Below, piece after piece: positions 4,804-56,085 of a stretch of 64,000 nt of DNA. This DNA comes from Dendrobates tinctorius (Eukaryota). The position numbers were made by a program, and so were the translations under genes. The notes under the pieces are model-generated. The model saw nothing but the letters and a program-made list of their open reading frames with translations, was not told where the DNA came from and did not search any database. Where the stretch lies: assembly GCF_039654945.1 (NCBI RefSeq), contig NW_027361714.1, positions 44,826,001-44,890,000 on the forward strand, read 5' to 3'. Numbering within the stretch: the first letter of the stretch is position 1; every line of letters starts with the position of its first letter.

Positions 4804-5992
4804 CAGGGTGGGCCATTTATATGGATACACCTAAATAAAATGGAAATGGTTGGTGATATCAACTTTCTGTTTGTGGCACATTAGTATATGGGAAGGGGGA
4901 AACTTTTCAAGATGGGTGGTGATCATGGCAGCCATTTTGAAGACGGTCATTTTGGATCCAACTTTATTTTTTTCAATGGGAAGAGGGTCATGTGACACAT
5001 CAAACGTATTGAGAATTTAACGAGAAAAGCAATGGTGTGCTTAGTTTTAATGTAACTTTATGCTTTCATTAGTTATTTACAAGTTTTTGAACACTTATAA
5101 AATGTATTCAAAGTGCTGCCCATTGTGTTGGATTGTCAATGCAACCCTCTTCTCCCACTTTTGACACACTGATAGCAACGGCACGGAAGAAATGCTAGCA
5201 CAGGCTTCCAGTATCCGTTTTTTCAGATGCTGCACATCTCGTATCTTCACAGCATAGACAATTGTCTTCAGATGACCCCAAAGATAAAAGTCTAAGGGGG
5301 TCAGATCGGGGGACCATAGTGGCCAATCAACTGGCCCACGACGACCAATCCTTTTTCCAGGAAACTGTTCATGTAGGAATGCTTGGACCTGAATCCCATA
5401 ATTGATGGTATGGTGTGGTATATGGGGTACAAAGATAGTGGGGCCATTCTTCATCAATGGAAACCTCAATGCCTCTGGATATCTGAAACTGCTACATGGT
5501 GATGTGTTGCTCTCTTTATGCACTGAAGATGGCACGTTCCCTGAGTTTTTCCAGCAAGATGGTGCACCACCACATTATGGGTGTTAGGTCCGAGCATTCC
5601 TACAAGGAATCTGACCCCCTTAGACTAGCATTTCTTCTGAGGTGTTCCTATCAGTGTGTCAAGAGTGGGAGAAGGGGGTTGCAATGACAATCCAACACAA
5701 TGGGCAGCACTTTGAAGACATTTTATAAGTGGTCATAAACTTGCAAATTAGTCATGAAAGAAAGTTACGTTGAAACCAAGCACACCATTGTTTTTCTTGT
5801 GAGATTCTCAATAAGTTTGATGAGTCACATGACCCTCTTCCCATTGGAAAAAATAAAGTTGGATCCAAAATGACCGACTTTAAAAAGGCCTCCATGGTCA
5901 CCACCCATCTTGAAAAGTTTCCCCCCTCCCATATACAAATGTGCCACAAACAGAAAGTTGATATCACCAACCATTCCCATTTTATGTAGGTG
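4804..5992. mobile_element. Foldback derivative of a DD41D (rosa/Visitor-type) mariner-like element
   Basis: TA|CAGGGTGGGCC left end. Minus strand carries GRRGPVDWPLWSPDLTPLDFYLWGHLK (5095-5400); plus strand carries VWCGIWG..FFQQDGAPPHYGC (5402-5587). Combining the two halves gives 41 aa between the second and third D. Arms are inverted copies; the right terminus is truncated. Confidence 0.8.
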
Positions 5993-6944
5993 CTATGATT
6001 GGAGAACAAAACAAATAAACACCAGAACATGGAGAACTTAACTAATAGACAACAGTGGTTGGAGAACTAAACTACTAAACAGCTTGAGTTGGAGAAATAA
6101 ATTAGTACACATCAGGTGATGGAGGGCAAAAGCACTAGACACCAAGGTGTCACTAGACACTAAGTCTTAGAATCCCCAAGGCTTGCGGAAGAAACCTTTG
6201 TATCTAACACTTCCTCCAGTGCTTCTGCCTCCCCCACCTCCTGTAGGGCCTCCACCTGCATCCTCAACTTCTGCCTTAAGGAAACACTTGTTCCAACACT
6301 GCACAGAGAATTCCCCCTCACTGACCCCACAGCCACCAGTCACCCAGTGCCCAATCAGTGAGAGGTAACTCCCCTGTCCATGCTTGCTCAGTCAGGTGTC
6401 ACTGCTGAAATGCACCCTGGACACACAGAGTTTTTCAGGGAATGAGTGATATTGTCTGTGACATGCTGGTGTACAGCAGGCACATCTTTCTTAGAGAAGT
6501 AATGGTGAGAGGGCAACTGTTACTGGGGGACTGCGATGGCCATCAGCTTTAAGAAGCCATCTGTATCCACAAGGCAGAAGGTCTGCATTTCCATGGTCAA
6601 TAGATTGGATTTGCCATGCAATAATCACAGGGATCACAGACCATGGGTCATGCAGAACCATTGTGCAACCATTGTAGCAAAGAGCTCTCAGTTGGGCAAT
6701 ATCCGCCAGAAAATTTACACAGTTGGGCGAAGATCATCTGAGGTTTATTGTTCACAATAATTAGTTCTCAGAAAACTAATGGTGAGCATACGGCATATCC
6801 ACCTCCGGATTAGAACGCATGGAATATGTGTATGTCCGGCCATACGATCATTTCTAACTCCACAATAACCCCACACTCCTTGCTGCCACCAACAATTCTG
6901 TTTTTAAAATAAGTTATAAATATAGGCCAATTGAACGCAATTCT

Positions 6945-7275
6945 TCTTTGGAGCTTCACTCCATCAGGGTCTTCCGTGCCCTCTCTCTTCAAGTAGTGGT
7001 CATATACCATCCCCCAGGTTCACCCACTCACTTCCTTGACCACTTTTCTACCTTGCTGCCACACTTCTGTCTTCAGATTTCCCAACCCTTATCCTGGGAG
7101 ACTTCAACAGCCACACCTCCCCAACTGCATCCCACCATCTATCTCTAGCCACTTCTTGTGGCTTCTCAAAACTTTCAACCTCTGAGACACACAAAGACAG
7201 TAACACCCCTGATCTGGTCTTTGTCCGGATCAGTTCAAACTCCTATCTAGAAAACTCACCTCTTACTCTTTCTTC
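6945..7275 (+). mobile_element. L2 LINE endonuclease fragment
   Basis: VVVIYHPPGSPTHFLDHF motif (VIYRPPG-type) and C-rich L2 composition; an L2-like 3' tail lies at ~9120-9270. Confidence 0.65.
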
Positions 7276-7385
7276 CCCATGAAATTAGGAGTATAACCAT
7301 AACTTACACATTTTTAGGTGCACCCTCAAAACACATCTTTTTAGGGCATCCTATCACATTCCCTAATCAAAGTCCTTTTTATATA

Positions 7386-9021
<1,636 letters not shown>

Positions 9022-15486: not shown

Positions 15487-16029
15487 CAGCTCTGGCAAAA
15501 ATTAAGAGACCACCACATCAAAACCCTATCATAGGCAGCCTATTTTCCAGACCTGAACCCCATGGAAAACCTCTGGAATGTAATCAAGAGGATGATGGAT
15601 AGTCACAAGCCATGAAACAAAGAGGAACTGCTTAATTTTTTTGCGCAAGAAGCAGTGTGAAAGACTGGTGGCAAGCACGCCAAGATGCATGAAAGCTGTT
15701 TTAAAAATCATGGTTATTCCACGAAATATTGATTTCTGAACTCTTCCTGAGTTAAAACATTAGTATTGTTGTTTCTAAATGATTATCAACTTGTTTTCTT
15801 TGCATTATTTGAGGTCTGAAAGCACTGTTTTTTGTTTTATTTTTTAATTTTGAATTTCTCCTTTTCAGAAAAAAACAACAAAATTTATTGCTTGAAAATT
15901 TGGAGACATGTTGTCAGAAGTTTTTAGACTAAAAGAACAATTTACACTTTACTCAAAAATATACATATAAAGAGAAAAATCAGACAAACTGAACATTTGG
16001 AAGTGGTCTCTTAATTTTTGACAGAGCTG
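15487..16029 (+). mobile_element. Internally deleted Tc1 inserted in a minisatellite-bearing MITE (~14472-16380)
   Basis: TA TSD, TIR CAGCTCTGGCAAAAATTAAGAGACCAC; retains the C-terminal PDLNPMENLW...HGYSTKY. Confidence 0.9.
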
Positions 16030-16726
16030 TATATTGTATAATGCACAAACATAGGCAGAATCTAATGTAATGTACCCCCATAGGCATACTCTAGTATAAT
16101 GCCCTCTCCTTAGGCAAACTTTATATAATATAATGCACCCCCCATAGGCAGACTCTTATAATGCACCCCCATAGGCCTACTCTAATATAATGCACCCCCA
16201 AACCAGACTAATATAATGCACCCCCATAGGCAGACTATGGTATAAGGCAGCCCCCCATAGGCAGAATCTATAGTATAATGAAGCCCCTCCATAGGCAGAC
16301 TCTATAGCATAATGCAGCCTCATAAAAAAATAAATACAATACTCACCTGAGTCACCTCTTCTCCTCGTTCCTCCGCACGCGATGACTCCAGCGCCATTTT
16401 ACTGAAGTAATATACTACAACGTTAACATAGCAGTGCACTATGTTGACAATGTAGTACATTTCTTGAATAAAATGGCACCGGAGTCAACATGTGTGCATA
16501 CCGCGATCTCTGTCGCTATATTATTGAAGACACTGTATATGTGAATTTGCAGAGAGTGTATTCAAAAAATGGCGCCATAAATGTACCAATAAAAATGCTC
16601 TCCACTCGAGCGTAGAACGGGTTCAATAGCTAGTATACTGTATTTATGTGCATATAGATATATATGTTTATAAACAATATGACACCCTAGAATATGTATA
16701 AGATGAGATGAATGGATGGATAGATA

Positions 16727-19307
16727 GAGGTGCTGCTCACAAAATTAGAAAATCATCAAAAAGTTAATTTATTTTAGTTGCAAAATACAATACAATACAA
16801 AAGTGAAACTCATTATATAGAGTCATTACAAACAGTGTGATTTATTTTAAGTGTTTATTTCTGTTAATGCTGATGATTATGGCTTACAGCCATTGAAAAC
16901 CCAAAAGTGAATTAGAATACTTTATAACACCAGCTTGAAAAATGATATTAAAATCTGAAATGTTGGCCTACTGAAATGTATATTCAGTAAATGCCCTCAA
17001 TACTTGGTCGGGGCTCCTTTTGCATCAATTACTGCATCAATGCGGCATGGCGTGGAGGCGATCAGCCTGTGGCACTACTGAGATGTTATAGAAGCCCTGG
17101 TTGCTTTGATCACATCCTTCAGCTCGTCTGCATTGTTGGCTCTGGTGTCTCTCATCTTCCTCTTGACAATACCCCATAAATTCTCTATGGGGTTAAAGTC
17201 AGGCGAGTTTACTGGCCAATCAAGCACAGTGATACTGTTGTTTCAAAACCAGGTATTGCTACTTTTAGCAGTGTGAACATGTGCCAACTTCCAAGTCCTG
17301 CTGGAGAATGAAATTTCCATCTCCAAAAAGCTTGTCGTCATAGGGAAGCATGAAGTGCTCCCCTTCTTCCCAGAGCCATAACTTTAATTTTTCCATCAAT
17401 ATGGCCATGTGAGTGCTTAATTTTTGTGGGACGAGTTGTACTTTTGAAACACATCATTGATTTTAGCATATCTTGTACTTGAAAAAGGGAAAAAAAAATT
17501 GCAAGTGCGGTGAAATTGCAAAAAAAAGTGCAATCTCACAAGTTTTTTGTTTGTCTTTTTTGCTAGGTTCACATAATGCTAAAACTGACCAGCCATTATG
17601 ATTCTCCAGGTCATTACGAGTTCATAGACACCAAGTGGTGAAAAAAAAAATCAAAGTTTGCTAAAAAAAAAAGAAAATAAAAATTGCGCCAATTTCCGAT
17701 ACCCATAGGGTCTCCATTTTTCGTGATCTGGGGGTGGTGAGGGCTTATTTTTTGAGTGCCGAGCTGACGTTTTTAAGGGTACTATTTATATGCAGATATG
17801 ATCTTTTGATTGCCCGTTATTGCATTTTAATGCAATATCGCGTTGACCAAAAAAACGTAATTCTGGTGTTTTGATTTTTTTTGCCGCTATGCCGTTTAGC
17901 GATCAGGTTAATCTTTTTTTATTGATAGATCGGGCGATTCTTAAAGCGGCGCTACCTATTGTGTATGTGTGATTTTTTTCTTAACTGTTTTATTTTGAAT
18001 GGGGCGAAAGGGGGGTGAATTAAACTTATATTTTTTTCATATTTTTTAAAACATTTTTTTAAAATTTTGGCATGCTTTAATAACCTCAATGGGAGGCTAG
18101 AAGCTGCCACAACTTGATCGGCTCTGCTACATATTGGCAATGAGCAGACCACAGGTGGTGCTCATAGCAATCCAGCATCAACAACCATAGAGGCCTCTGG
18201 TTGTTATGCCAACTCATCGCTAACCACCGATCACATGACGGGGGTTGGCGATGCACGTATTTCCGGCCCGGTGGCCAGAAGCGCTGGTTAAATGCCGCTG
18301 TCAGCGTTTGACAGCGGCATTTAACTAGTTAATAGGTGCGGGTGGACGGGCGTCCAATTGCAATAAGGGGTTAATATTTCCTGGTAGACGGCTGCGCTGA
18401 CTTTGGTCTTGATAACACACAGTCAACTTACACCAGCAGATGACATGATTCCCCAACCTGTCACTGATTGTGGAAACTTCACACTAGACCTCAAGCAGCT
18501 TGGAATGTGTGCCTCTCCACTCTTCCTCCAGACTCTGGGACCTTGATTTCAAAATGAAATGCAAAATTTACTTTAATCTGAAAGCAACACCTTGGACCAC
18601 TGAGCAACAGTCCAGTTCTTTTTCTCTTTGACCAAGGTAAGACGCTTCTGGTGTTGTCTATTAGTCATGAGTGGCTTGACACAAGGAATGAGACACTTGT
18701 TGCCCATGTCTGTGATACGTCTGTGTGTGGTGGCTCTTGAAGAAATTACTCCAGGCGGAAATCCTCTCTTTGTGAATCTCCTCCAAATTTTTGAATGGCC
18801 TTTTCTTAACAATCCTTTCAAGGCTGTGGTTATCCCGGTTGCTTGTGCACCTTTTTCTACCACAGTTTTTCCTTCCACTCAACTTTCTACTAATATGCTT
18901 GGATACAGCACTCTGTGAACAGCCAGCTTCTTTAGCAATGACCTTTTGTGACTTACCCTTCTTGTGGAGTGTCTCAATGACTGCCTTCTGGATATCTGTC
19001 AAGTCAGCAATCTTCCCAATGATTGTGGAGCCTACTGAAACAGCCAAAGGGCCCGAAACAGCCTAAGGGACCTTTTTAAATACTTAGGAAGCATTTGCAG
19101 ATGTTTTTTGTTAATTATTCTAATTTACTGAGACAATGACTTTTGGGTTTTCATTGGCTGTAAGCCATAATCATCAACATAAACAGAAATAAACAATTGA
19201 AATAGATCATTTTGTTTGTAATGACTCTATATGAGTTTCACTTTTTGTATTGAAAAACTGAAAAAAATAACTTTTTGATGATATGCTAATTTAGCGAGAA
19301 GCACTTG
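16727..19307 (-). mobile_element. Degraded Tc1 element interrupted by a piggyBac-type MITE
   Basis: TIRs (C)AGGTGCT.CTCACAAAATTAG / CTAATTTAGCGAGAAGCACTTG, TA flanks, HTH SQKVIAKEAGCSQSAVSKHI, GRKR, WSKVLLSD. Confidence 0.9.
17361..18370 (-). mobile_element. piggyBac-type non-autonomous element (same family as 41791-43638)
   Basis: Ends AGGGG|TTAA (18371-18374); reverse-complement similarity to 41791-43638. Confidence 0.75.
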
Positions 19308-20287
19308 TACTGTATTTCAAATTGACATGCTTTAGCACTACATAGTGCAACTTTTTTTGCTTATTGTATATGGAGATGGCTGCTCCTAGTATGCACCTGA
19401 TCACACTAGCTTGGAAGTGCCAGTCACTCTTTTGTCATTTGTATATTAGCTCTCTGACCGAGCACTCCGCCCTCCAGCATGTGGTGGATTTTAATTGCAA
19501 CAGGGTCCAACCTACCCATAAAATCAGACTGTGAAGAGAGGTATTCACCTCTACCCAGGAATTCAGACTTGAGTCTTAGGTATTCACACTAGAGACAGCA
19601 GTTTTGAGACCACCTTGTTGTTGGTTGCTGGGAATGCATAAAGTTGCCAAATTATGTGCTAAGTGTCTCATTTTTTTCCCTAATATCCAGAAGCAGTATA
19701 GCTATTCATATATTTCATATTGACATGCTTTAGCACTACAGAGTGCAACTTTTCATGCTCTCAGAATAGTCTAACAGGCTTTTTGTAGCTTAGTGACCCA
19801 GATGATGTCCGAGCTTCCTAAACGCTGCGATCGATATTGATTGCGGCATTTAGTAGTTAAACAGCTGGGAGTGGTGCGGGCACCGCTCCTGGCTATGAGA
19901 GCCAGGGCTTGCCTATCATGCAAAGTTCCTGGCACAGCTTCTGTGACACGCATGATCGCCATGACATACCTATACATCATCAGTCAGGAACCCCTATCCA
20001 ACCATGATGTATGTCCAATGTTGTGAAGGGGTTAATATATGTGACCTTGTAGGAAGGTCGATTACACAAGGTGTGGTTTCTTTAAAATTTAATGAATAAT
20101 AAACAATTTTAAGTTTTAGCAGTTTTTTTTCTAGTTTGGTTGTGTTTCCTTGTGACCACCTATTGCTTCTTTATACAGTGTATACAATTTTTGGTTTTCC
20201 TTCACTGTGTGTGTATATTTAACATTCCACACTTGTAGCCACAATGCTCACTCTGGACCATTACATTAATAAGACATTTACTGTACA

Positions 20288-23200
20288 TTAGAATCATAGA
20301 ATCGTAGAGTTGGAAAGGACCTCCTGGGCCATCTGGTCCAACCCCCTGCTCAAAGCAGGATTCGCTAAATCATCTCAGACAGATGTCTGTCCAGCCTCTG
20401 TTTGAAGACTTCTATTGAAAGAGAACTCACCACCTCTCGTGGCAGCCTGTTCCACTCATTGATCACTCTGTCAAAAAGTTTTTTCTAATATCTAATCTGT
20501 GTCTCCTCCCATTCAGTTTCATCCCATTGCTACTAGTCTTTCTTTGTGCACATGAGAATAAAGATGATCCTTCTACAATGTGACAGCCCTTGAGATATTT
20601 GTAGACAGCTATTAAGTCTCCTCTCAGTCTTCTCTTCTGCAAGCTAAACATTCCCAAATCCTGCAACCTTTCCTCATAAGACAGGGTTTGCAGACCGGTC
20701 ACTGTTGTGAGTTCATTCTCGGGTTCCCCTTCTGAACTCCCTCTGGTGGTGTCGGGAGGTGGTGATGCTGGTTTGATTGGTGGAGATCTGTCATCTCAGG
20801 ATGGGGATGATGATTGGATCTCGGGATTCTCAGATTGGATTTAAGACAGCCGCCGCCCTATTCAGTTGCTGGTGATTCCTTCTGCTTGTCAGCTCTTGGT
20901 TTTCAGCTCTGTTCCAGTCATCTAAAGCTAAGTTTTTCTGCTAATGTTCACACTTGATTTTGTTGGTCTATTCAGTTTTTGTGTGGTCTGCCAGACCCGG
21001 CTGGGGGCTGAGCTGAATTTCCACTCTTATTTATCAGTATTTTGACAATTGGCTTTTTGTCCCTTACTAGTTCGGTCTCTTTTTGCTCTGTCTCAGAATA
21101 TTCCAGAGTGCTGATATAGTGGGAGAAGTCTAGTGACTTCAGGGTTAATTTTGCTATCAGAAGTGTTGGACATTATTTTTGTAGGGTTTTTTGCAGGTTG
21201 CAGACAGTGACTTGCCTTTCCTTTCCTGTCTAGTTAGTTTGGGCCCCATCATTTGCTCAGCCTATTTTCCTGCCTGTGTTTGTGCCTTCATCTTGTTTCA
21301 CCGTCAATACATGTGTGGGGCTAACTATTCCTTTGGGGTCTGCTCTGGGGCAGTTAGTTTTCCCTTTTCTTGCTTTAGGCTTATGTAGTCCTCCGGCTGT
21401 GACGAGGCGTCTAGGAACATCGTAGGCACGCTCCACGGCTACTGCTAGTTGTGTGGTAAGATCAGGGATCTGCAATCTGCATAGTTACCAACTTCTCTGG
21501 TTTTCTGTGGCTTAGCTTGTTTTGTTTTTTTTTTTCTCCTCGGTGACCCATTCATAACAGGTCACCATTCTGGTCGCTCTTTTCTGAACTTGCTCCAGTT
21601 TGTTGAGGTCTTTTTTAAAATGTGGCGCCCAAAACTGGACACAGTATTCCAGATGAGGTCTGACCAAAGAGGAGTAGATGGCAATAATGACTTCACGTGA
21701 TCTAGACTGTATGCTTCTGTTTATACATCCTAGAAATGCATTTGCCTTTTTGCTGCTGCATCACGCTGGTGACTCATATTCAGTATGTGATCAATTAGTA
21801 TACCCAAGTCTTTTTCACATGTGCTGTTGCTTAGCCCTATTCCTCCCATTTTGTATATGCTTTTTTTATTTTTATTGCTAAGATGTAGTACTTTGCATTT
21901 TCCCTGTTAAAAACCATTCTGTTAGTTGCTGCCCACTGCTCCAGTTTATTTATATCTTTTTGAATCCTCTCTCTCTTCTCTAGTATTAGCTATCCCTCCT
22001 AGCTTTGTGTCATCAACAAATTTAATCAGTTTACCCTCAATTCCTTCATCTAAATCGTTAATAAAGATGTTGAACAATACAGGGCCCAGGACAGAGCCCT
22101 GTGGTACCCCACTTGAGACATTCTTCCAACTGGATGTGCAGCCATTTACAACCACTCTTTGGGTCCGATCACTAAGCCAGTTATGAATCCACCTAACAGT
22201 TGCCTTGTCCATTCCATACTTAGCCATTTCTTCAATAAGGATTGTGTGAGATACTTTGTCAAATGCTTTGCTGAAGTCAAGATATCCTATACCTACAGCA
22301 TTTTCCTGATCCACCCAATCAGTGATTCTGTCATAGAAGAAAATTAAGTTAGTCTGACATGACTTATTAGTTACAAACCCATGCTGACTCTGTTTAATCA
22401 CTTAATTCTTGTCCAGGTACTTACATACATGTTGTTTAATAATTTGTTCAAAGATCTTTCCTGGTATAGAAGTCATACTCACCGGCCTATAGTTCCCTAG
22501 GTCCACCTTCTTCCCCTTTTTGAAGATAGGAACATTTGCTCTTCTCCAGTCTTTTGGGACTTCTCCTGTTCTCCAAGAATTTTCAAAGATTTTGGAGAGG
22601 GGTTCAAAAATTTCTTCTGCTATCTCCTTCAGAACTCTGGGGTGTAATTCATCTGGACCTGGAGACTTGAATTCATTTAGGTTAGCTAAGTGTTTCCTCA
22701 CTAACTTTCTGTTTATAGATTTCCTGGATTCTTCTATTCCCTTAATAGGACAGTGAAGAACCGTTGATGTTACATTTCCTTTATGAGAGAAAACAGATGC
22801 AAAATAGGAATTTAAAAGTTTGGCCTTCTCAACATCCTGTCTTACCATTTCATCATTTTCATTCTGTAAAAATCCTATAGCATCTTTGACTTTTCTTTTA
22901 CTTTTGACATATCCCCAAAATCCTTATTGTTTTTGACATCTCTTGCAAGCCTCAATTCATTGTCATCTTTAGTAATCTGATTTGTGCCCTGCAATTTCTG
23001 CAGACAGCATTATATTCTTCTTTAGATATGCCTCCTTCTTTCCATTTTATAAACATTTCTTTCTTCCTTTTTAGCATGTGCTTAAGTTCTGTGTTCATTC
23101 ATCCTGGTTTCCTTAAACGCTTCCTATTCTTCCCTCTTTTCGGAATTGTTAACGATTGGGCTTTGAGAATTTCATTTTTCAAGATTTCCCATCCTTCCTG

Positions 23201-50037: not shown

Positions 50038-53037
50038 TCATTTTGTTTTTGGTAAACAGTAGAATGATGTGCTTTACCAAAAAACTCCATCATGGCCTCA
50101 TCTGTCCAAAAGATGCTTTCCCAGAAGGATCTTGGCTTATTCACATGCATTTTTGCAAATAGCAGTTTAGCATTTTTATGTGTGTGTCAGCATTGGTCAT
50201 CTCCTGGGTCTCCTGCCATAGCGTCTCATTTCATTCAAATATTGACGGATAGTTTGCACTGATGCTGATACACCCTGAGCATGCAGGACAGCTTGAATTT
50301 CTCTTGAGCTGCTAATCCAACATCCGGACTATCCTGCATTGCAACATTTCAGCAATTTTTCTCTGCTGCCCTCATCCAGGGGGAATAGCTACAGTGCCGT
50401 AGGTTGTAAACTTCTTAATTATGTTGCGCACCATGGATAAAGGAAAATCAAGATTTCTGGAGATGGACTTGTAACCTTGAGATTGTGGATATTTTTCAAT
50501 AAATTTGGTTCTCAAGCCCTCAGATAATGCTCTTCTCTTTCTGTTCTCCATGCTTAGTGTGGCACACTCAGACACACAATGCAAAGATTGAATGTCTCCC
50601 CTTTTTATCTGATATTTATATGATTTTCATATTGCGCACACCTGTTACTTGCTACAGGTGAGTTTGAATGAGCATCACATGCTTGAAACAAAGTTGTTTA
50701 CCCACAATTTTGGAAAGGTACCAACAATTTTGTCAGGTCCATTTTGGGGATGTATGAAATTATGTCCAATTTGCTTTTTTCTCATTTTTTTGTTGTTGTT
50801 CCAATACAAAAAAAAAAAATTCTGTGAGAAATACTTCATACAATTTCAAAGGTGTCAACACTTTGGCCATCCCTGTATCCACTGGTAGGTGATAACTGAT
50901 ACATCGGTGTAGTACCCCTAGTCATAAAACCACTGCCAGAAGGTGATAAATGGAGTGGAAGTTTACACATGCACCATGTTGCTTCATTCAAATCTATATC
51001 ACTAAAAATCATTAAAAAATACCCAAAGCTGCACTCCTCTATCTACATCAGTGTCAGACTTGAAAGGAGTAGTAGAGCTCATGGGCGATCTGCTGCTCTA
51101 TTCAACTGCTTCTGACAGTGGTCAGGGGAGCAAGTACTTAAGCCACCAAGTTCTGGCATCAAGAGGAACAGAAAGAGAGCAGCCGCAGCTCTGACTTCCT
51201 CCCTTTAGTTTTATCTGTTTACTACAAATCTTATAAGTGACTTCCATTGGTGACACGGCAGTTGTCTATGTGGTAGTCTTGTTCTATCCAGATGTGAACC
51301 AACAAAACCTTGGATATGCACCGACTGTTTAAGTGATGTATTATCTAAGGGTGTTCAGATCCTGTGGCTAGAGGGGCAGATACGTTGAGTCCTTCATATA
51401 GTCCCACAGAAAAAAGTTGCAAGGTGTCAGGTCTGCGGAAGCTAACACAAAATTGCAAATTGACCTGACAACGAATACTTTCAAACAGTCTGTGGGGGCC
51501 TAAGCTAGAAAAAATAACTTTCCCCAGTTTTCTACAGTCAAATCCCTTTACTTCCTGCAAAGGTTTTTTTTCTGATAAAGACCCCTCTAGACTCCTTGGG
51601 TCATCTAGGAAAAATGATTGGAGAAGAAAAGAGAGCTGTAATGAGCACTGAGTATGGGTGAGCGGATCAAATTGTGGGACTATGGTCCAGGTCAGTAAAA
51701 CCTAACTGCTAGAAGGGAAATCCACAAATCTCTTACCTTCATTGGCATGTAATTTGATTTGTCAGGGCTGGCACAATGTCTTTTGTATGATGTGACATAC
51801 AGATTAATTCAAATAAGTCCTGGCTGATCAAAAGCTGTGCTGGCAATATCGAAAGGTAAGAGATTCGTGGGACTCCTTCATAGCCACCAGGTAGCACTGA
51901 CCTGGATGCTGGACCGGAATTCTGCGAATCAATCTGTTCATCACTAGTCCTGAGTCATGCCAAGAGTTAAGCATCCTTAACATTCATGTGTGGGGTTACT
52001 TTTTATCAAAGAGAGTGGGCTCTCTCGCAATTTTACGTAAGAACACTGCCATGAATAAATAGTATTTAAACATCCTCCAATGGCAACTTCTTCAAACGAT
52101 CCAAAAGCTTTTTGGTGGTTAACAATTATTTTTCCAGCATGATGCAAGGCAAAATCGATAGGCTTTCATTTATCAAAGCGACTATGCCAGATTTCTGGCA
52201 TAAATAATTTTGAAAAAAATCACAATATTTTTGCACAACGCAGAGTGGCACAAAATGAAAGCAACTTCGCGTTTTCACACCAGTTTAGCCCAACTCCATC
52301 ACAATGGGCCAAGTTGGGCGTGTGACACCACAGCTTGTCCACTTCATGACGAGCTGCGCTATTCCTTACATTAGAAATCTTACACCAGTCCCTGCCCAGA
52401 GTAGGATTTGTGTCAAGGCACATGCTGCTTGTCAGACACACCGGATTCATTAAGGGAAATGTGCCCCTTAATGAATGAGGAGCATCTGACCCCAACACGC
52501 CCCTTCATTAAGATTGAAGAGGATTGGTGTGCACACAGTTGTCGACATGAGGTGTAGGCGGAAAGGGGTATGTTGATCCTGGTACATAAAGTCAGGAAAA
52601 TTCACTGCACACTCTTATTTCAAATGCAGATTAATTTATTTCAAACCACGTGTAGGTAGGCAGATATATGTTCAGAGACAATTAATTGGTGCAGGATATT
52701 GAGGAAACATAAGTGGTCACGGCACACAAACCAGAAGGCGCAGGAGACTGCGACTCACTTCTCTTCCTAAGCTTATACTCACTGCCTTTCCCCAACAGAG
52801 GCCACAAAAGTCATACTACCTATAAAAACAAAGCCTCCAAGAGCAACTGGATGATTAAGACGTGGGATTAAGTTGAAACATTACTTATGTCGCCTCAATA
52901 TCCTGCACCCAATAATTGTCTCAAAACATATATTTTCCTACCTACATATGGTATGAAATAAATTAATTTGCATCATGAAATAAGATTGTGCGGTGAGTTC
53001 TACTGCCTTCATTAAGATTGGCGTGAACATCATACTA

Positions 53038-53096
<59 letters not shown>

Positions 53097-53099
<3 letters not shown>

Positions 53100-55995
53100 G
53101 GGTAGCGCTGTCATTCAAGGTTGGGGGACACTCGCTTGGCAGCAAATAAATCACATCCGGTACGGGTTTTCCATAAAACAATATCAGTCCGTGAGGTTTA
53201 TTATTCAGCATAAACCAAAGGAAGCACCATAAGGTTCATATCAGCATAGCGTCCATTATATAGGCTATTCAGCCTCATCATTATCTCACCCGTCAGGGTT
53301 CCTTATGCGGCTTCACCATCGCATACGTTAGTTCCCTCCAGGGAGCTCTGAGGCACACATCGCCAATGCTCAACACAGCCGCTCCACAGGCTGTTAGCCA
53401 GGAGATTATTCTCCTCACGGGACCTTCCAAACTGGACCAATCAGGTCCCAGCATTCACACCTTGTGACGTACCCTGGCCACCTTATATGGTCCATAGCCA
53501 CGCCCACTTGGTCACATGGCTATGACCTCATCACAGGTCCTGCACACACTTACAAAGCCTTTTACTATAGGAATTTTCAGACACACCCCTGGGTGGATTT
53601 GTAGGTAACCAGAACCCGCCCATCTCTCTAGTTACCTGAAGACTTCTCCCTTACATTTAGAAACAACACCTCAGCAATGATATTGCTGATCACACATACA
53701 CAAGTCTCCATCTCAAAGCCACCCACTTTGAGATACATAACCATCCTTCAGGATTCTGCCACTCATCCGTTCTCTTGGGACATCCACACTGCGCCCCCGA
53801 GTGGACACTGGTCATTACACCACATACCCCGCCCCTCTGTTCAAACTTGTGGGGTTGAACACACAATCTTACACCAGGATCTCGAGACCGGGCACTCATT
53901 ACACCTTGCCCCATAGGTCGAGAGAACCGTCTCCCTCTGTCATCCGGCCTCATTTCTACGTTAGGCCTCCCCCGCCCCAGCGGTCAAAATATCGGTCATT
54001 GTCTTTGACCCTCCAGTTGCAGTCTGTATGCGTCATCAGACACTGTTTAGTCACCACCCTCCTAGAGTGCGCTTCGTCACCTGACCGTTCTCCCACTGAC
54101 CGGCTCTCCCAGTTGGTACGGTCATCAGTCTTAAATCGGTCCTACTGTCTGGCCTGAGTCTGACTCATTCAGCGTCTCACAGGAACTAATTTCTCTCAGC
54201 TTCGCACGGCCCATCGAACTGCCACTTGCTGACATTCTTCGGCCACCTGCCATGTCACTATTTGGAGGAACCCTTCGGTTCCTTACATCTTGGGTTGGAG
54301 GCGGCCGCCACCTGGTATTCCATACTTCTTTATTAATTCGCTGACGGTCCAGCCTCAACTGCTCAATTTCTTGCAGGTACCCCACTCGATACTCCACGAG
54401 CATCCGAAAGTCTCTCAGGCTCTCTGCGGAGCCAACCACCATGATGGGAATTCTACCCACTTCAATGGATACCTGATCTTCATCATCAGGAGGGATCCTC
54501 ACCCTGACCACACCGCCGATATTCACAAGGTCTTGCATTACCTTCCCGAATCTTCCAATAATTCTCCCAATCAGAGCTTTGGGTACCGGAACCACGTCTT
54601 TCCGCAAACCCAGCCGATCCATAGCCTCACCAGGTCCAGGGGCTCGGCGGGTGCTCTTCAGGACATCTGTCTCTGCCTGAGACTGCCCAACACGCGCGCC
54701 TCACCAGGTCCAAGGTAACACCACGTGCTCCTGGGATCCGACTCTGCTCCCAGGGCTGACCCTCCAGGACCTTTCCTCACTGAACCCTCCCAGTACACTG
54801 TCTTCCTCACTGACCCAGGTCAGTACCACACGAACACCTGTCCGATACCTGTGTCAGCCACACGGGTCACCGTTTTACTCATTGACCCAGGTCAGTACCA
54901 CACAAACACCAGTCCGTTTCTCCTGTGTTGCCCACACAGGTTCTCGGGTACCTCTTCTCCGCAGAGGCACCCTAGCAATTACCAGACTTTCTCCTGGGGA
55001 AGCAGCCGCACTGGGCTCACCGATCCGGACAGTGCCTTACTCACTAGGCCGCCCCATGGTTTCCAGAACCATAGCCAGACAGTGGCTTCCCCACTTGCAG
55101 GCTGTCACAGGCTCTGCTCACACGTGGCCGGTCCGCAGCACATCACACGGATTCCACAACCGTCAGCCCTCCTGGCTCAGCGTAGCTCTTTGCCACCGAA
55201 TTTTGCAGTCCTTATCCGTTGCTCCCAGCAACAAGGCTACACCACTGCCCATAGCCTTCTCCACCAATTGTGAGGTAGCGCTGTCATTCAAGGTTGGGGG
55301 ACACTCGCTTGGCAGCAAATAAATCACATCCGGTACGGGTTTTCCATAAAACCATATCAGTCCATGAGGTTTATTATTCAGCATAAAACAAAGGAAGCAC
55401 CATAAAGTTCATATCAGCATAGCGTCCATTATATAGGCTATTCAGCCTCATCATTATCTCACCCGTCAGGGTTCCTTATGCGGCTTCGCCATCACATACG
55501 TTAGTTCCCTCCAGGGAGCTCTCAGGCACACATCTCCAATGCTAACACAGCCGCTCCACAGGCTGTTAGCCAGGAGATCCTTCTCCTCAAGGGACCTTCC
55601 AAACTGGACAAATCAGGTCCCAGCATTCACACCTTGTGACCTACCCTGGCCACCTTATATGGTCCATAGCCACGCCCACTGGGTCACATGGCTATGACCT
55701 CATCACAGGTCCTTCACACACTTACAAAGCCTTTTACTATAGGCGGTTTCAGACACACACCTGGGTGGATTTGTAGGTAACCAGAACCCGCCTATCTCTC
55801 TAGTTACCTGAAGACTTCTCCCTTACACTTAGAAACAACACCTCAGCAATGATATTGCTGATAAGACATACACAAGTCTCCATCTCAAAGCCACCCACTT
55901 TGAGATACATAACTATCCTTCAGGATTCTGCCACTCATCCGTTCTCTTGGGACATCAACACAGCGCCCCCTAGTGGACACAGTGGTCATTACACC
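53097..55995 (-). mobile_element. Non-autonomous LTR retrotransposon (LTRs 53097-53824 and 55269-55995) in a (TA)n tract
   Basis: Two ~727-bp highly similar direct LTRs; PBS-like TGGTGGAGAAGGC (tRNA-Ala-type) after the 5' LTR; PPT AGAGGGGCGGGG before the 3' LTR; no RT, integrase or protease motifs. Confidence 0.9.
54131..54622 (-). CDS. FMR1/FXR1/FXR2-like KH2 domain + NES helix protein carried by the LTR element
   Basis: VPKALIGRIIGRFGKVMQDLVNIGGVVRVRI...VVGSAES...LVEYRVGYLQEIEQLRLDRQRI aligns without gaps to FXR1 [31 protein letters not shown]...FVGTKES...[22 protein letters not shown] (recalled from memory). Confidence 0.85.
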   Translation of the reverse strand: MDRLGLRKDVVPVPKALIGRIIGRFGKVMQDLVNIGGVVRVRIPPDDEDQVSIEVGRIPIMVVGSAESLRDFRMLVEYRVGYLQEIEQLRLDRQRINKEVWNTRWRPPPTQDVRNRRVPPNSDMAGGRRMSASGSSMGRAKLREISSCETLNESDSGQTVGPI

Positions 55996-56003
55996 TATAT
56001 ATG

Positions 56004-56085
<82 letters not shown>

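What the first reader, a model, noticed from the sequence alone, without database searches (positions are those of the whole stretch)
53097..55995. LTR retroelement carrying a captured fragile-X-family (FXR/FMR1) KH domain as its only recognisable protein
Seen: two similar LTRs with PBS and PPT around a 1.44-kb interior lacking pol. It contains a 163-aa open ORF in the element's sense with an intact GxxG loop (GRFG), GVVRVRI and the YL.E.EQLR helix, followed by an Arg-rich tail; a frameshifted KH1-like remnant (GPGG..QSRIPGARGVTLD, ~54710-54770) lies upstream. Known: this matches the KH2 + NES region of FMR1/FXR1/FXR2, with the short variable loop of FXR1/2; these proteins bind RNA, shuttle, and in flies associate with Argonaute/Piwi silencing. 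My by-eye gapless alignment gives roughly 40-45% identity with mostly conservative changes. Inference: an old mRNA capture kept under element-level selection, since high protein divergence sits in a recent insertion. It could act as a Rev-like RNA export/packaging factor or as a decoy of host silencing. One NES hydrophobic residue is lost (LRLDRQRI). I know no description of such an element.
Basis: partly seen in the sequence, partly recalled or inferred. Interest (0 to 1): 0.9.

Follow-up and report, generated by a model that had tools for sequence, protein, structure and literature searches.

The report
Frog LTR element carrying captured FXR1
This is a broken, roughly 8-million-year-old copy of a pol-less LTR retroelement family of poison frogs whose only protein was built from a captured piece of the host RNA-binding gene fxr1 and has been kept under selection across several frog genera, which I could not find described in print.

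Summary
Two 727/728-bp LTRs (95.7% identical) with a PBS and a PPT flank a 1.44-kb interior without pol. Its 163-aa sense ORF is a true FMRP/FXR KH2 domain (PDB 2qnd, E 4e-16; the AF2 model's top fold match is also 2qnd).

The window copy is a relic. A 2.4-kb internal deletion at 54624-54628 removed the start of a 700-1000-aa family ORF.

The family is real and high-copy:
- Seven LTR-flanked copies were fetched from Dendrobates tinctorius, two Ranitomeya species and Anomaloglossus baeobatrachus.
- None has pol; five have clean 4-bp target duplications.
- LTR pairs reach 99.7% identity.

The full protein has, in order, short repeats, a zinc-knuckle-like motif, a retropepsin-like domain, a coiled coil (dendrobatids), FXR1 KH0, KH1 (Anomaloglossus only), KH2 and the C-terminal core.

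The FXR1 part is intronless, while the host gene is split into at least 7 exons. It nests inside anuran FXR1 and shares one 5' breakpoint, so a single old capture is likely. dN/dS between subfamilies is 0.2-0.45.

The function is inferred, not shown: an element-encoded RNA-binding, self-associating Gag substitute. I rate it a new variant of a known kind (LTR transduction); no paper describing it was found.

The parts
55269..55995 (-). 5' LTR (727 nt) of the element, which reads on the minus strand
   Evidence: Direct repeat of 53097-53824, 95.7% identical. It ends ...CTCACA like relatives L002 and L003. Its first 3 bases read ATA where the 3' LTR and relatives read TGT.
55255..55266 (-). Primer-binding-site-like TGGTGGAGAAGG, 2 nt after the 5' LTR
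   Evidence: The same position in relatives reads TGGTGGAGAATGCGGGCAT (L006). I recall this as the complement of a vertebrate tRNA-Ala 3' end, but that was not verifiable with the tools.
54629..55254 (-). Non-coding leader.
   Evidence: Aligns with the leaders of L002 (4576-5221), L003 and L001 at 75-86% identity. Duplication. FXR proteins hit it only at E 2-8.
54624..54628 (-). Junction of a 2.4-kb internal deletion with 5 nt of microhomology. The deletion removed the rest of the leader and the N-terminal repeats, retropepsin-like domain, coiled coil and KH0.
   Evidence: Element positions 1128-1372 align to L002 4986-5221 and positions 1368-2899 align to L002 7615-9169. In a run of the same organism, other copies diverge from the window exactly here. 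They read on into the sequence encoding KAARRLELAR of the full ORF (loose end at 54628).
54131..54622 (-). 163-aa ORF: the C-terminal remnant of the family protein, starting at an internal Met
   Evidence: 79-80% identical to residues 529-697 of P0151; 2qnd, E 4e-16; P0001 at 83% identity, E 5e-76.
54383..54604 (-). KH2 domain (type I KH, beta-alpha-alpha-beta-beta-alpha) with GxxG loop GRFG and the short variable loop of FXR1/2
   Evidence: AF2 pLDDT is 89-97 outside the loop. Foldseek top hits are 2qnd_A/B, rmsd 2.4-2.6, 39-40% identity. Alignment A2.
54134..54385 (-). Long C-terminal helix with the NES-equivalent stretch (LRLDRQRI), then the start of the FXR C-terminal core and a disordered Arg-rich tail
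   Evidence: Pfam FXMRP1_C_core over residues 80-139, sub-threshold at 17.5 bits. Helix 66-103 and a disordered tail in the model. Alignment A2.
53839..54130 (-). Decayed continuation of the family ORF's tail, interrupted by stop codons
   Evidence: tblastn of P0003 residues 557-862 runs in one frame across this stretch into the LTR. Stops are visible in the translation.
53827..53838 (-). Polypurine tract AGAGGGGCGGGG, 2 nt before the 3' LTR
   Evidence: Conserved in all seven relatives (AGAGGGG...).
53097..53824 (-). 3' LTR (728 nt)
   Evidence: It starts TGTGGTGTA like relatives. The terminal A of ...CACA is missing at the (TA)n flank.
53038..53096 (.). (TA)n microsatellite flank, with a matching (TA)n at 55996-56082 on the other side: the insertion target. 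The target-site duplication is unreadable.

Best explanation
SHOWN.
- The feature is an internally deleted, decaying copy of a non-autonomous (pol-less) LTR retroelement family. The insertion is about 8 My old.
- Among the annotated genomes searched, the family appears only in dendrobatoid frogs (Dendrobates, Ranitomeya, Anomaloglossus).
- Intact members are 4.4-5.4 kb and carry a single 700-1000-aa ORF.
- The ORF is a chimera. Its N-terminal part looks retroelement-derived: QKGxES repeats, a CPxC knuckle-like motif and a retropepsin-like domain. Dendrobatid copies add a coiled coil.
- The rest is a 5'-truncated, intronless copy of host fxr1 running from KH0 through KH2 into the C-terminal core and an Arg-rich tail.
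- The window keeps only KH2 plus the C-terminal part.

INFERRED, capture. The fxr1 cDNA was acquired once, before Aromobatidae and Dendrobatidae split. The likely route is template switching onto a co-packaged host mRNA, or a retrocopy landing inside an element, taking the place where RT and integrase would sit. KH1 was lost later in the dendrobatid lineage.

INFERRED, mechanism (about 45% of my belief).
- The protein serves the element as a Gag/ORF1p-like factor.
- It self-associates through the coiled coil and binds the element's own RNA through KH2 and the Arg-rich tail.
- This would form an RNP that gets the RNA into the particles of an unidentified helper, which supplies RT and integrase.
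- Access to host FXR granules through KH0 is a possible extra.

The window copy itself most likely does nothing.
For: Structure of the window copy.

KH2 homology and fold.

High copy number:
- 7,000 contigs of one DNA run lie on 2.2 kb, with dozens of distinct variants per site.
- The element is also present in a second species.

Linkage to LTRs elsewhere:
- LTR pairs of 95.4-99.7% identity surround the ORF in L001-L007.
- 4-bp TSDs: TAAC, GCAC, ATAT, GCAT, ATAG.
- No RT or integrase domain in any member up to 999 aa.

Window deletion.

Donor and mode of capture:
- The best non-element hits are FXR1.
- In the tree, the element clade (support 94/97) sits inside anuran FXR1 (100/98), and the window groups with D. 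tinctorius copies (100/100).
- In R. imitator the host fxr1 region is split into at least 7 exons, while element copies are contiguous.
- The 5' breakpoint is the same (...FFKCMVDVPEDL) in Anomaloglossus and dendrobatid copies.

Selection:
- dN/dS is 0.2-0.45 over KH0 to C-core between subfamilies.
- The bootstrap upper bound of pN/pS is at most 0.64.
- LTRs of the same subfamily pairs are barely alignable.

Self-association: complex prediction on P0003 residues 330-470, two copies.
- Score 0.46 against a best control of 0.01.
- The runs agree in at least 45% of contacts, and partner pLDDT is at least 63.
- The mark was reached by 21 of 30 proteins solved as pairs of one chain and by 0 of 23 solved as single chains.

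Retropepsin-like N-terminus:
- DSG...(I/L)(I/L)G(R/Q)D motifs.
- Full-length but sub-threshold Pfam matches to Asp_protease_2 and RVP (E 0.05 and 0.18).
- Atlas feature hits of 0.92-0.94, nearly all retroviral protease clusters.
Against: - No RNA binding, expression or mobilisation was measured. The 'RNA?' runs are guesses, and contigs cannot show transcription.
- No autonomous partner was found.
- The retropepsin call is weak: AF2 pLDDT 54, and neither Foldseek nor a PDB profile search matched.
- dN/dS rests on eight sequences chosen because they were annotated as intact, and dS is partly saturated.
- Support for the single-capture node is 94/97, not starred, and long-branch attraction between two fast lineages is possible.
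- The KH1 loss coincides, to within 3 residues, with the 171-nt host exon. That could point to a second input from an exon-skipped host mRNA rather than a simple deletion.
- Anomaloglossus copies have no evident coiled coil, so it cannot be essential to the family.
Confidence: 0.7

Rival explanations
1. Decoy or hijacker. The FXR1-derived protein acts on the host rather than on the element's own RNA. Through KH0/KH2 it would join or poison host FXR1/FMRP RNP granules and their links to small-RNA silencing in the germline, which would lift repression of the element or of its helper.
For: - KH0, the region that I recall mediates interactions among FXR proteins, is retained and conserved (KH_9 E 1e-15 to 1e-25; dN/dS 0.2-0.5).
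- The Tudor/Agenet domains are absent, so the protein would be an incomplete FXR1.
- The GxxG loop changed from GKNG to GR(F/L/S)G in every element copy.
Against: - Nothing was tested here.
- The module evolves about ten times faster than host FXR1 on the tree. That fits less well with keeping a precise host interface, although arms-race evolution could produce it.
- The window copy lacks KH0.
Confidence: 0.15
2. Passive cargo. The fxr1 fragment is a hitch-hiker with no role. The family spreads only because of its LTRs, PBS, PPT and packaging signal, like ETn, VL30 or LARD elements.
For: - Non-autonomous LTR elements without any functional ORF are common (general knowledge).
- The window copy lost most of the ORF yet is otherwise a normal element, though nothing shows the deletion preceded its insertion.
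- Copies decay after insertion.
Against: - dN/dS is 0.2-0.45 with bootstrap bounds below 0.65, between subfamilies whose LTRs have diverged beyond alignment.
- ORFs of 700-1000 aa remain intact in many copies of three genera.
- The module has been retained since before the split of two frog families.
Confidence: 0.1
3. The 163-aa window ORF is itself a functional KH2-only mini-protein made by this locus.
For: - The frame is open for 163 codons.
- The KH fold is predicted with confidence and the GxxG loop is intact.
Against: - It starts at an internal Met created by a deletion junction that other copies do not share.
- 8 of the 10 codons where this copy departs from nearly all others are nonsynonymous.
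- One of those changes hits the nearly invariant Ser of the KSGVV motif.
- The ORF's original tail is broken by stops.
Confidence: 0.04

Closest known systems
Replication-defective transducing retroviruses with Gag-onc fusion proteins (for example Gag-Abl, Gag-Myc)
   Same: An LTR element in which pol has been replaced by a 5'-truncated, intronless host cDNA. The cDNA is fused in frame to an N-terminal retroelement-derived part, and the element depends on a helper for RT and integrase.
   Different: - This family is germline-resident and high-copy.
- It has persisted across several frog genera, with purifying selection on the cargo.
- The cargo is an RNA-binding protein rather than a growth regulator.
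- No exogenous virus is implied.
Plant LTR retrotransposons carrying captured gene fragments (maize Bs1 and similar; from my own knowledge)
   Same: Retrotransposon-mediated transduction of processed host gene pieces into a pol-less LTR element, producing a chimeric ORF.
   Different: - Those are low-copy and mostly young.
- Evidence that the cargo serves the element is weak.
- This family is in a vertebrate, is high-copy and has dN/dS well below 1.
Non-autonomous LTR elements mobilised in trans (mouse ETn/MusD, VL30; plant LARD/TRIM, BARE-2)
   Same: LTRs, PBS and PPT are present, there is no RT or integrase, amplification is through a helper, and internal deletion derivatives such as the window copy occur.
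   Different: Those carry no ORF or only a gag remnant. None is known to me to encode a host-derived RNA-binding protein.
LINE-1 ORF1p
   Same: What it may work like: a coiled coil for self-association, followed by a single-strand RNA-binding domain and a basic tail, encoded by the element whose RNA it coats.
   Different: - There is no homology: RRM versus KH.
- LINE-1 is a non-LTR element, and ORF1p is a trimer.
- RNA coating is not shown for the frog protein.
Host FXR1 (FMR1/FXR1/FXR2 family)
   Same: KH0, KH2, the NES-equivalent helix and the C-terminal core are homologous. The donor clade is anuran FXR1.
   Different: - The two Tudor/Agenet domains are absent.
- KH1 is absent in dendrobatid copies.
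- GKNG became GRxG.
- The branch is about tenfold longer.
- The gene is intronless and lies inside LTR elements.

Membership tests
LTR retroelement (structural definition) | Two long terminal direct repeats in the same orientation | tested here: met
   53097-53824 and 55269-55995, 95.7% identical.
LTR retroelement (structural definition) | TG...CA termini | tested here: inconclusive
   Relatives start TGTG and end ACA. In the window the 3' LTR starts TGTGG and the 5' LTR ends CACA. The outermost 3 nt at one end and 1 nt at the other, next to (TA)n, do not match.
LTR retroelement (structural definition) | PBS complementary to a tRNA 3' end next to the 5' LTR | not testable with these tools
   TGGTGGAGAAGG in the window and TGGTGGAGAATGCGGGCAT in L006. 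The match to tRNA-Ala is from memory. No tRNA gene was found in the sequences held, and no text match was found.
LTR retroelement (structural definition) | Polypurine tract before the 3' LTR | tested here: met
   AGAGGGGCGGGG at 53838-53827, conserved in seven relatives.
LTR retroelement (structural definition) | Target-site duplication | tested here: inconclusive
   For the window both flanks are (TA)n, so it is unreadable. The criterion is met in relatives: 4-bp TSDs in L002, L003, L005, L006 and L007.
LTR retroelement (structural definition) | Repeated in the genome | tested here: met
   7,000 contigs of one DNA run were laid on 2.2 kb, with dozens of variants per site. At least 17 annotated gene models exist in D. 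tinctorius.
Autonomous LTR retrotransposon or endogenous retrovirus | Encodes reverse transcriptase and integrase | tested here: not met
   No RT, RNase H or integrase domain in the window interior or in any family member.
Type I KH domain | Beta-alpha-alpha-beta-beta-alpha fold with a GxxG loop between the first two helices | tested here: met
   AF2 elements E7-14, H15-22, H24-36, E40-42, E57-64 and H66-103. GRFG loop. 36 PDB KH domains matched at E <= 1e-3, with 2qnd on top. Pfam KH_1 is above its cut-off.
FMR1/FXR1/FXR2 protein family (as a bona fide member) | N-terminal tandem Tudor/Agenet domains | tested here: not met
   No Agenet or Tudor_FRX1 hit in P0001-P0007 or in the longer members, while host proteins have them.
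FMR1/FXR1/FXR2 protein family (as a bona fide member) | KH0, KH1 and KH2 in tandem | tested here: not met
   The window has KH2 only. Dendrobatid copies have KH0+KH2 and lack FXR2 residues 225-279. Only the Anomaloglossus copies keep KH1.
FMR1/FXR1/FXR2 protein family (as a bona fide member) | FXR C-terminal core after KH2 | tested here: inconclusive
   The window scores 17.5 bits against a cut-off of 29.6. Clear in relatives: the L006 ORF scores 62.7 bits and P0006 scores 33.2 bits.
Retro-transduced host gene (captured cDNA) | Intronless where the donor gene has introns | tested here: met
   Host fxr1 of R. imitator has KH0 to C-core in at least 7 exons over about 7 kb. Element ORFs are contiguous.
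Retro-transduced host gene (captured cDNA) | Nested within the donor's clade on a tree | tested here: met
   The element clade sits inside tetrapod, then anuran, FXR1 (100/97 and 100/98) and is separate from FMR1 and FXR2.
Retropepsin (N-terminal domain of full-length relatives; absent from the window) | D(S/T)G catalytic motif, the C-terminal (I/L)(I/L)G(R/Q)D motif and the retropepsin fold | tested here: inconclusive
   Motifs are present in P0004, L006 and L007 but degraded in others. Pfam E is 0.05 and 0.18. Atlas feature scores are 0.92-0.94 to RVP clusters. The fold model has pLDDT 54 with no match.

The most novel reading that the evidence does not exclude
A pol-less LTR element swapped the usual retroviral RNA-packaging machinery for a stolen host RNA-granule protein (FXR1 KH0-KH2-C), later adding a coiled coil. 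This home-made Gag/ORF1p-like protein, or its interference with host FXR/FMRP-linked silencing, would be what let the family persist and amplify across the poison-frog lineage. If so, the family would be a contributor to these frogs' giant genomes.
Probability: 0.3. Interest if true: 0.85.

Novelty: new variant of a known kind. Interest (0 to 1): 0.72.

Why it matters
Gene transduction by LTR elements is known from oncogenic retroviruses and a few plant elements. In those cases the cargo is short-lived or of no use to the element.

Here a vertebrate germline element family has kept a host-derived RNA-binding module under purifying selection. It has done so since before two frog families split, and the family reached high copy number without encoding RT or integrase.

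- It offers a natural experiment on what a non-autonomous retroelement needs in order to compete for a helper's machinery.
- It bears on conflict between transposons and host RNP-granule or fragile-X-family pathways.
- It is relevant to the build-up of giant amphibian genomes.
- It has a practical side. RefSeq models of these elements are named 'fxr1-like', 'FMR1 homolog' or 'restin homolog', or are fused to unrelated genes. That contaminates gene-family analyses in frogs.

Tried and rejected
Searches that found nothing or were inconclusive:
- The search for homologous proteins with the 163-aa ORF found nothing. This is an effect of its length filter; the exhaustive phmmer search then found the family.
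- The Atlas search on the ORF gave only generic KH clusters at 0.83 or below.
- For the retropepsin-like domain, the profile search against PDB gave only a chance EAL hit. The AF2 model was poor (pLDDT 54) and Foldseek gave nothing at E <= 1e-3. Retropepsin therefore remains a lead supported only by motifs, sub-threshold Pfam matches and Atlas features.
- The search for an autonomous partner, using the N-terminal 200 residues of P0004, found only the family itself.
- The tRNA-Ala identity of the PBS could not be checked. There are no tRNA genes in the window or the loci, and neither sequence string occurs in the paper library.
- The conserved 36-nt leader motif of relatives is absent from the window.
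- Literature searches found no description of this element. That covers KH or FXR1 with retrotransposon capture, the D. tinctorius genome paper, and LTR transduction in vertebrates.

Readings considered and rejected:
- A chance ORF: rejected on E 4e-16 and the fold.
- An ordinary processed fxr1 pseudogene sitting by chance between two solo LTRs: rejected because seven LTR-flanked copies carry TSDs.
- A domesticated host gene: rejected because of high copy number, TSDs and near-identical LTR pairs.

Full report
**1. What is in the window**

The region holds two direct repeats, 53097-53824 and 55269-55995. They are 95.7% identical, with 28 mismatches and 2 gaps. No further copy of either repeat occurs in the 64-kb window.

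The element reads on the minus strand:
- After the 5' LTR (...CTCACA) comes AT and then TGGTGGAGAAGG, a PBS-like site.
- Before the 3' LTR (TGTGGTGTAATG...) lies the polypurine tract AGAGGGGCGGGG.
- The interior is 1,444 bp and has no pol.
- Both flanks are (TA)n, so a target duplication cannot be read.
- The outermost 3 nt of the 5' LTR and the last nt of the 3' LTR do not match the family termini.

LTR divergence (K2P 0.040) corresponds to about 7.9 My at the 2.5e-9 rate used for D. tinctorius LTR dating (PMC11152451). The insertion is therefore not recent.

**2. The ORF**

The ORF at 54131-54622(-) encodes 163 aa.
- It matches the KH2 half of the human FMRP KH1-KH2 crystal structure 2qnd at E 4.3e-16. 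Other KH proteins follow at E 3e-4 or worse.
- Pfam gives KH_1 just above its cut-off and FXMRP1_C_core below it.
- With a 40-row alignment (A2), AF2 gives a confident type I KH fold (pLDDT 89-97 outside the variable loop). It is followed by a long helix through the NES-equivalent stretch and then a disordered Arg-rich tail.
- Foldseek ranks 2qnd first (rmsd 2.4-2.6, 39-40% identity), ahead of 34 other KH structures at E <= 1e-3.
- Identity is 43% to Ranitomeya FXR1, 39% to Xenopus FMR1 and 41% to a frog FXR2.

**3. The ORF is a fragment of a larger family protein**

An exhaustive phmmer search found proteins of 367-895 aa that match the ORF far better than any FXR protein does. P0001 is 83% identical at E 5e-76, and P0002-P0007 are 50-56% identical.

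These proteins are RefSeq models from Dendrobates tinctorius, Ranitomeya imitator and R. variabilis. They are named 'uncharacterized', 'fxr1-like', 'restin homolog' or 'FMR1 homolog'. One 90% cluster alone holds 11 D. tinctorius models on different scaffolds.

They share FMRP KH0 (KH_9, E 1e-15 to 1e-25), a single KH domain and the FXR C-terminal core. This block sits at residues ~460-750, behind a long N-terminal part.

tblastn shows that the window keeps only the part equivalent to residues 529-697 of P0151.

At DNA level, the window's leader aligns to L002 4986-5221, and its KH2 part aligns to L002 7615 onward, with 5 nt of overlap. So 2.4 kb is missing at window 54624-54628.

In a run of the same organism, other copies diverge from the window exactly there. 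They read into the codons for KAARRLELAR of the full ORF (loose end at 54628).

The ORF's ATG is therefore an internal Met. The in-frame extension upstream of it is translated leader.

**4. The 'KH1 remnant'**

The stretch at 54697-54777 hits KH1 of FXR proteins only at E 2-8, the same as dozens of noise hits. It lies in the leader that full-length relatives also have, about 0.8 kb upstream of their start codon. Dendrobatid family members have no KH1 at all.

**5. Linkage to LTRs elsewhere**

Seven loci were fetched for family proteins. Each has the ORF between an LTR pair:

| Locus | Species | LTR identity | Element size |
|---|---|---|---|
| L001 | D. tinctorius | 98.5% | 5.05 kb |
| L002 | D. 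tinctorius | 98.1% | 5.37 kb |
| L003 | D. tinctorius | 95.4% | about 5.3 kb |
| L004 | R. variabilis | 99.7% | about 5.0 kb |
| L005 | R. imitator | 98.7-99.6% | about 4.4 kb |
| L006 | Anomaloglossus baeobatrachus | 99.1% | about 5.1 kb |
| L007 | Anomaloglossus baeobatrachus | 97.2% | about 5.3 kb |

- Five of the seven have perfect 4-bp target duplications (TAAC, GCAC, ATAT, GCAT, ATAG).
- All have TGT...ACA-type termini except L004, whose boundaries I could not set cleanly.
- All have a TGGTG... PBS except L004, and all have an AGAGGGG-type PPT except L007 (CACAGGGGG).
- None has room or domains for RT or integrase.
- The window's LTR aligns over its full length with those of L002 and L003 at 75-77%. 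It shares only its first 51 nt with L001.

**6. Copy number**

7,000 contigs of one DNA run of the window's organism lie on 2,172 bases. There are typically 20-90 distinct variant contigs per listed site. A second species' runs hold the element too.

The KH region is covered about as heavily as the LTR. The tool warns, however, that depth is not a copy number.

**7. Origin of the cargo**

- After the family itself, the best hits are FXR1 of salamander, lizards and frogs, ahead of FMR1 and FXR2.
- In a careful ML tree the element sequences form one clade (94/97). It is nested in tetrapod FXR1 (100/97) and then anuran FXR1 (100/98). FMR1 and FXR2 are separate starred clades.
- The window ORF sits in a D. 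tinctorius subfamily (100/100).
- The host fxr1 of R. imitator has KH0 to C-core in at least 7 exons spread over about 7 kb. Element copies are contiguous ORFs, so the cargo came from processed mRNA.
- Homology starts at the same mid-exon point (...FFKCMVDVPEDL) in Anomaloglossus and dendrobatid copies. That argues for a single capture before Aromobatidae and Dendrobatidae split. The Dendrobatidae crown alone is put at about 36 My (PMC11152451).
- Anomaloglossus copies keep KH1. Dendrobatid copies lack a block that equals the 171-nt host exon encoding KH1, plus 3 residues.

**8. Selection**

Nei-Gojobori dN/dS over KH0 to C-core between subfamilies and species is 0.20-0.45. Bootstrap 97.5% bounds of pN/pS are at most 0.64. 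The two near-identical D. tinctorius copies give 0.59 (0.31-1.26).

The coiled-coil and N-terminal parts give 0.25-0.65.

Caveats: there are only eight sequences, all but the window's annotated as intact ORFs, and dS is partly saturated.

The window copy looks neutral. At the best-supported sites where it differs from nearly all other contigs, 8 of 10 codons are changed nonsynonymously. One change hits a nearly invariant Ser. The original tail of the ORF is cut by stops.

**9. The rest of the family protein**

The N-terminus has QKGxES-type repeats and a CPxC motif. A segment with DSG...(I/L)(I/L)G(R/Q)D follows.
- This segment aligns end to end with Asp_protease_2 and RVP, but below threshold.
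- It draws almost only retroviral-protease clusters in the Atlas feature search, at 0.92-0.94.
- The fold test failed for lack of a confident model.

Dendrobatid copies then have a coiled coil. As two copies, P0003 residues 330-470 scored 0.46 against a best control of 0.01. The contacts are in-register and heptad-spaced over residues 332-385. The runs agree in at least 45% of contacts, and partner pLDDT is at least 63. The mark was reached by 21 of 30 proteins solved as pairs of one chain and by 0 of 23 solved as single chains. This supports self-association but does not show it.

**10. How it most likely works**

Shown: a pol-less LTR family with integrase-type insertions, a single chimeric ORF, an FXR1-derived RNA-binding module under purifying selection, and recent activity in three genera.

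Inferred:
- Capture was by template switching onto a co-packaged fxr1 mRNA, or by a retrocopy landing inside an element, downstream of the protease region.
- Mobilisation is in trans, by an unidentified helper.
- The protein's role is that of a self-associating RNA-binding factor that packages or protects the element's RNA, Gag/ORF1p-like. I give this about 45%.
- The main alternative is interference with host FXR/FMRP granules and silencing, at about 15%.
- Passive cargo is disfavoured by the selection signal.

**11. Known or new**

Transduction by LTR elements and non-autonomous LTR families are known kinds. A vertebrate, high-copy family whose conserved cargo is an FXR1 fragment was not found in the literature searched.

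I rate it a new variant of a known kind. The window instance itself is a dead copy; the interest lies in the family it reveals.

Noticed in passing
L006:6357-6392, L001:9787-9822, L005:5695-5731: A 36-nt leader motif is 94% identical between Anomaloglossus and dendrobatid elements, although the surrounding leader has diverged. It contains a small hairpin, GTGGA-loop-TCCAC. It could be a packaging or dimerisation signal. It is absent from the window copy, where it falls in the deleted part.
   Followed up: partly
L008:28505-28675 (host fxr1 exon) versus the element proteins: The KH1 block missing from all dendrobatid element copies equals the 171-nt host exon (residues 347-403 of P0010) plus 3 residues. 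Anomaloglossus copies keep it. A near exon-precise loss in an intronless cargo hints at later recombination with an exon-skipped host mRNA.
   Followed up: partly
window 54796-54939: A 72-bp tandem duplication (81-88% identical) in the element's leader.
   Followed up: no
window 53097-53824 versus 55269-55995: The differences between the two LTRs are 10 transitions and 18 transversions, an unusual excess of transversions for neutral decay.
   Followed up: no
window 52624-52714 and 52883-52973: 91-nt inverted repeat arms (87% complementary), 168 nt apart, just upstream of the element. This looks MITE-like.
   Followed up: no
L001:2990-4353, 5602-7490, 15971-22688: Three long tandem-repeat arrays flank the D. 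tinctorius element, with self-matches offset by about 56, 69 and 84 nt. The element sits in satellite-rich DNA.
   Followed up: no
P0040 (R. imitator CAJ0932843.1), P0004, P0002, P0006, P0287, P0296: Public annotations absorb this element family into gene models. One model named long-chain-fatty-acid-CoA ligase begins with the element's KH segment. Others are named 'restin homolog', 'fxr1-like' or 'FMR1 homolog'.
   Followed up: partly
alignment A2: All element copies share signature changes relative to every host FXR protein: GKNG to GR(F/L/S)G, FVGT to VVGS (dendrobatid copies), and EYH(I/L) to EYR(V/M) (all but one copy). These may mark a change in RNA specificity.
   Followed up: no
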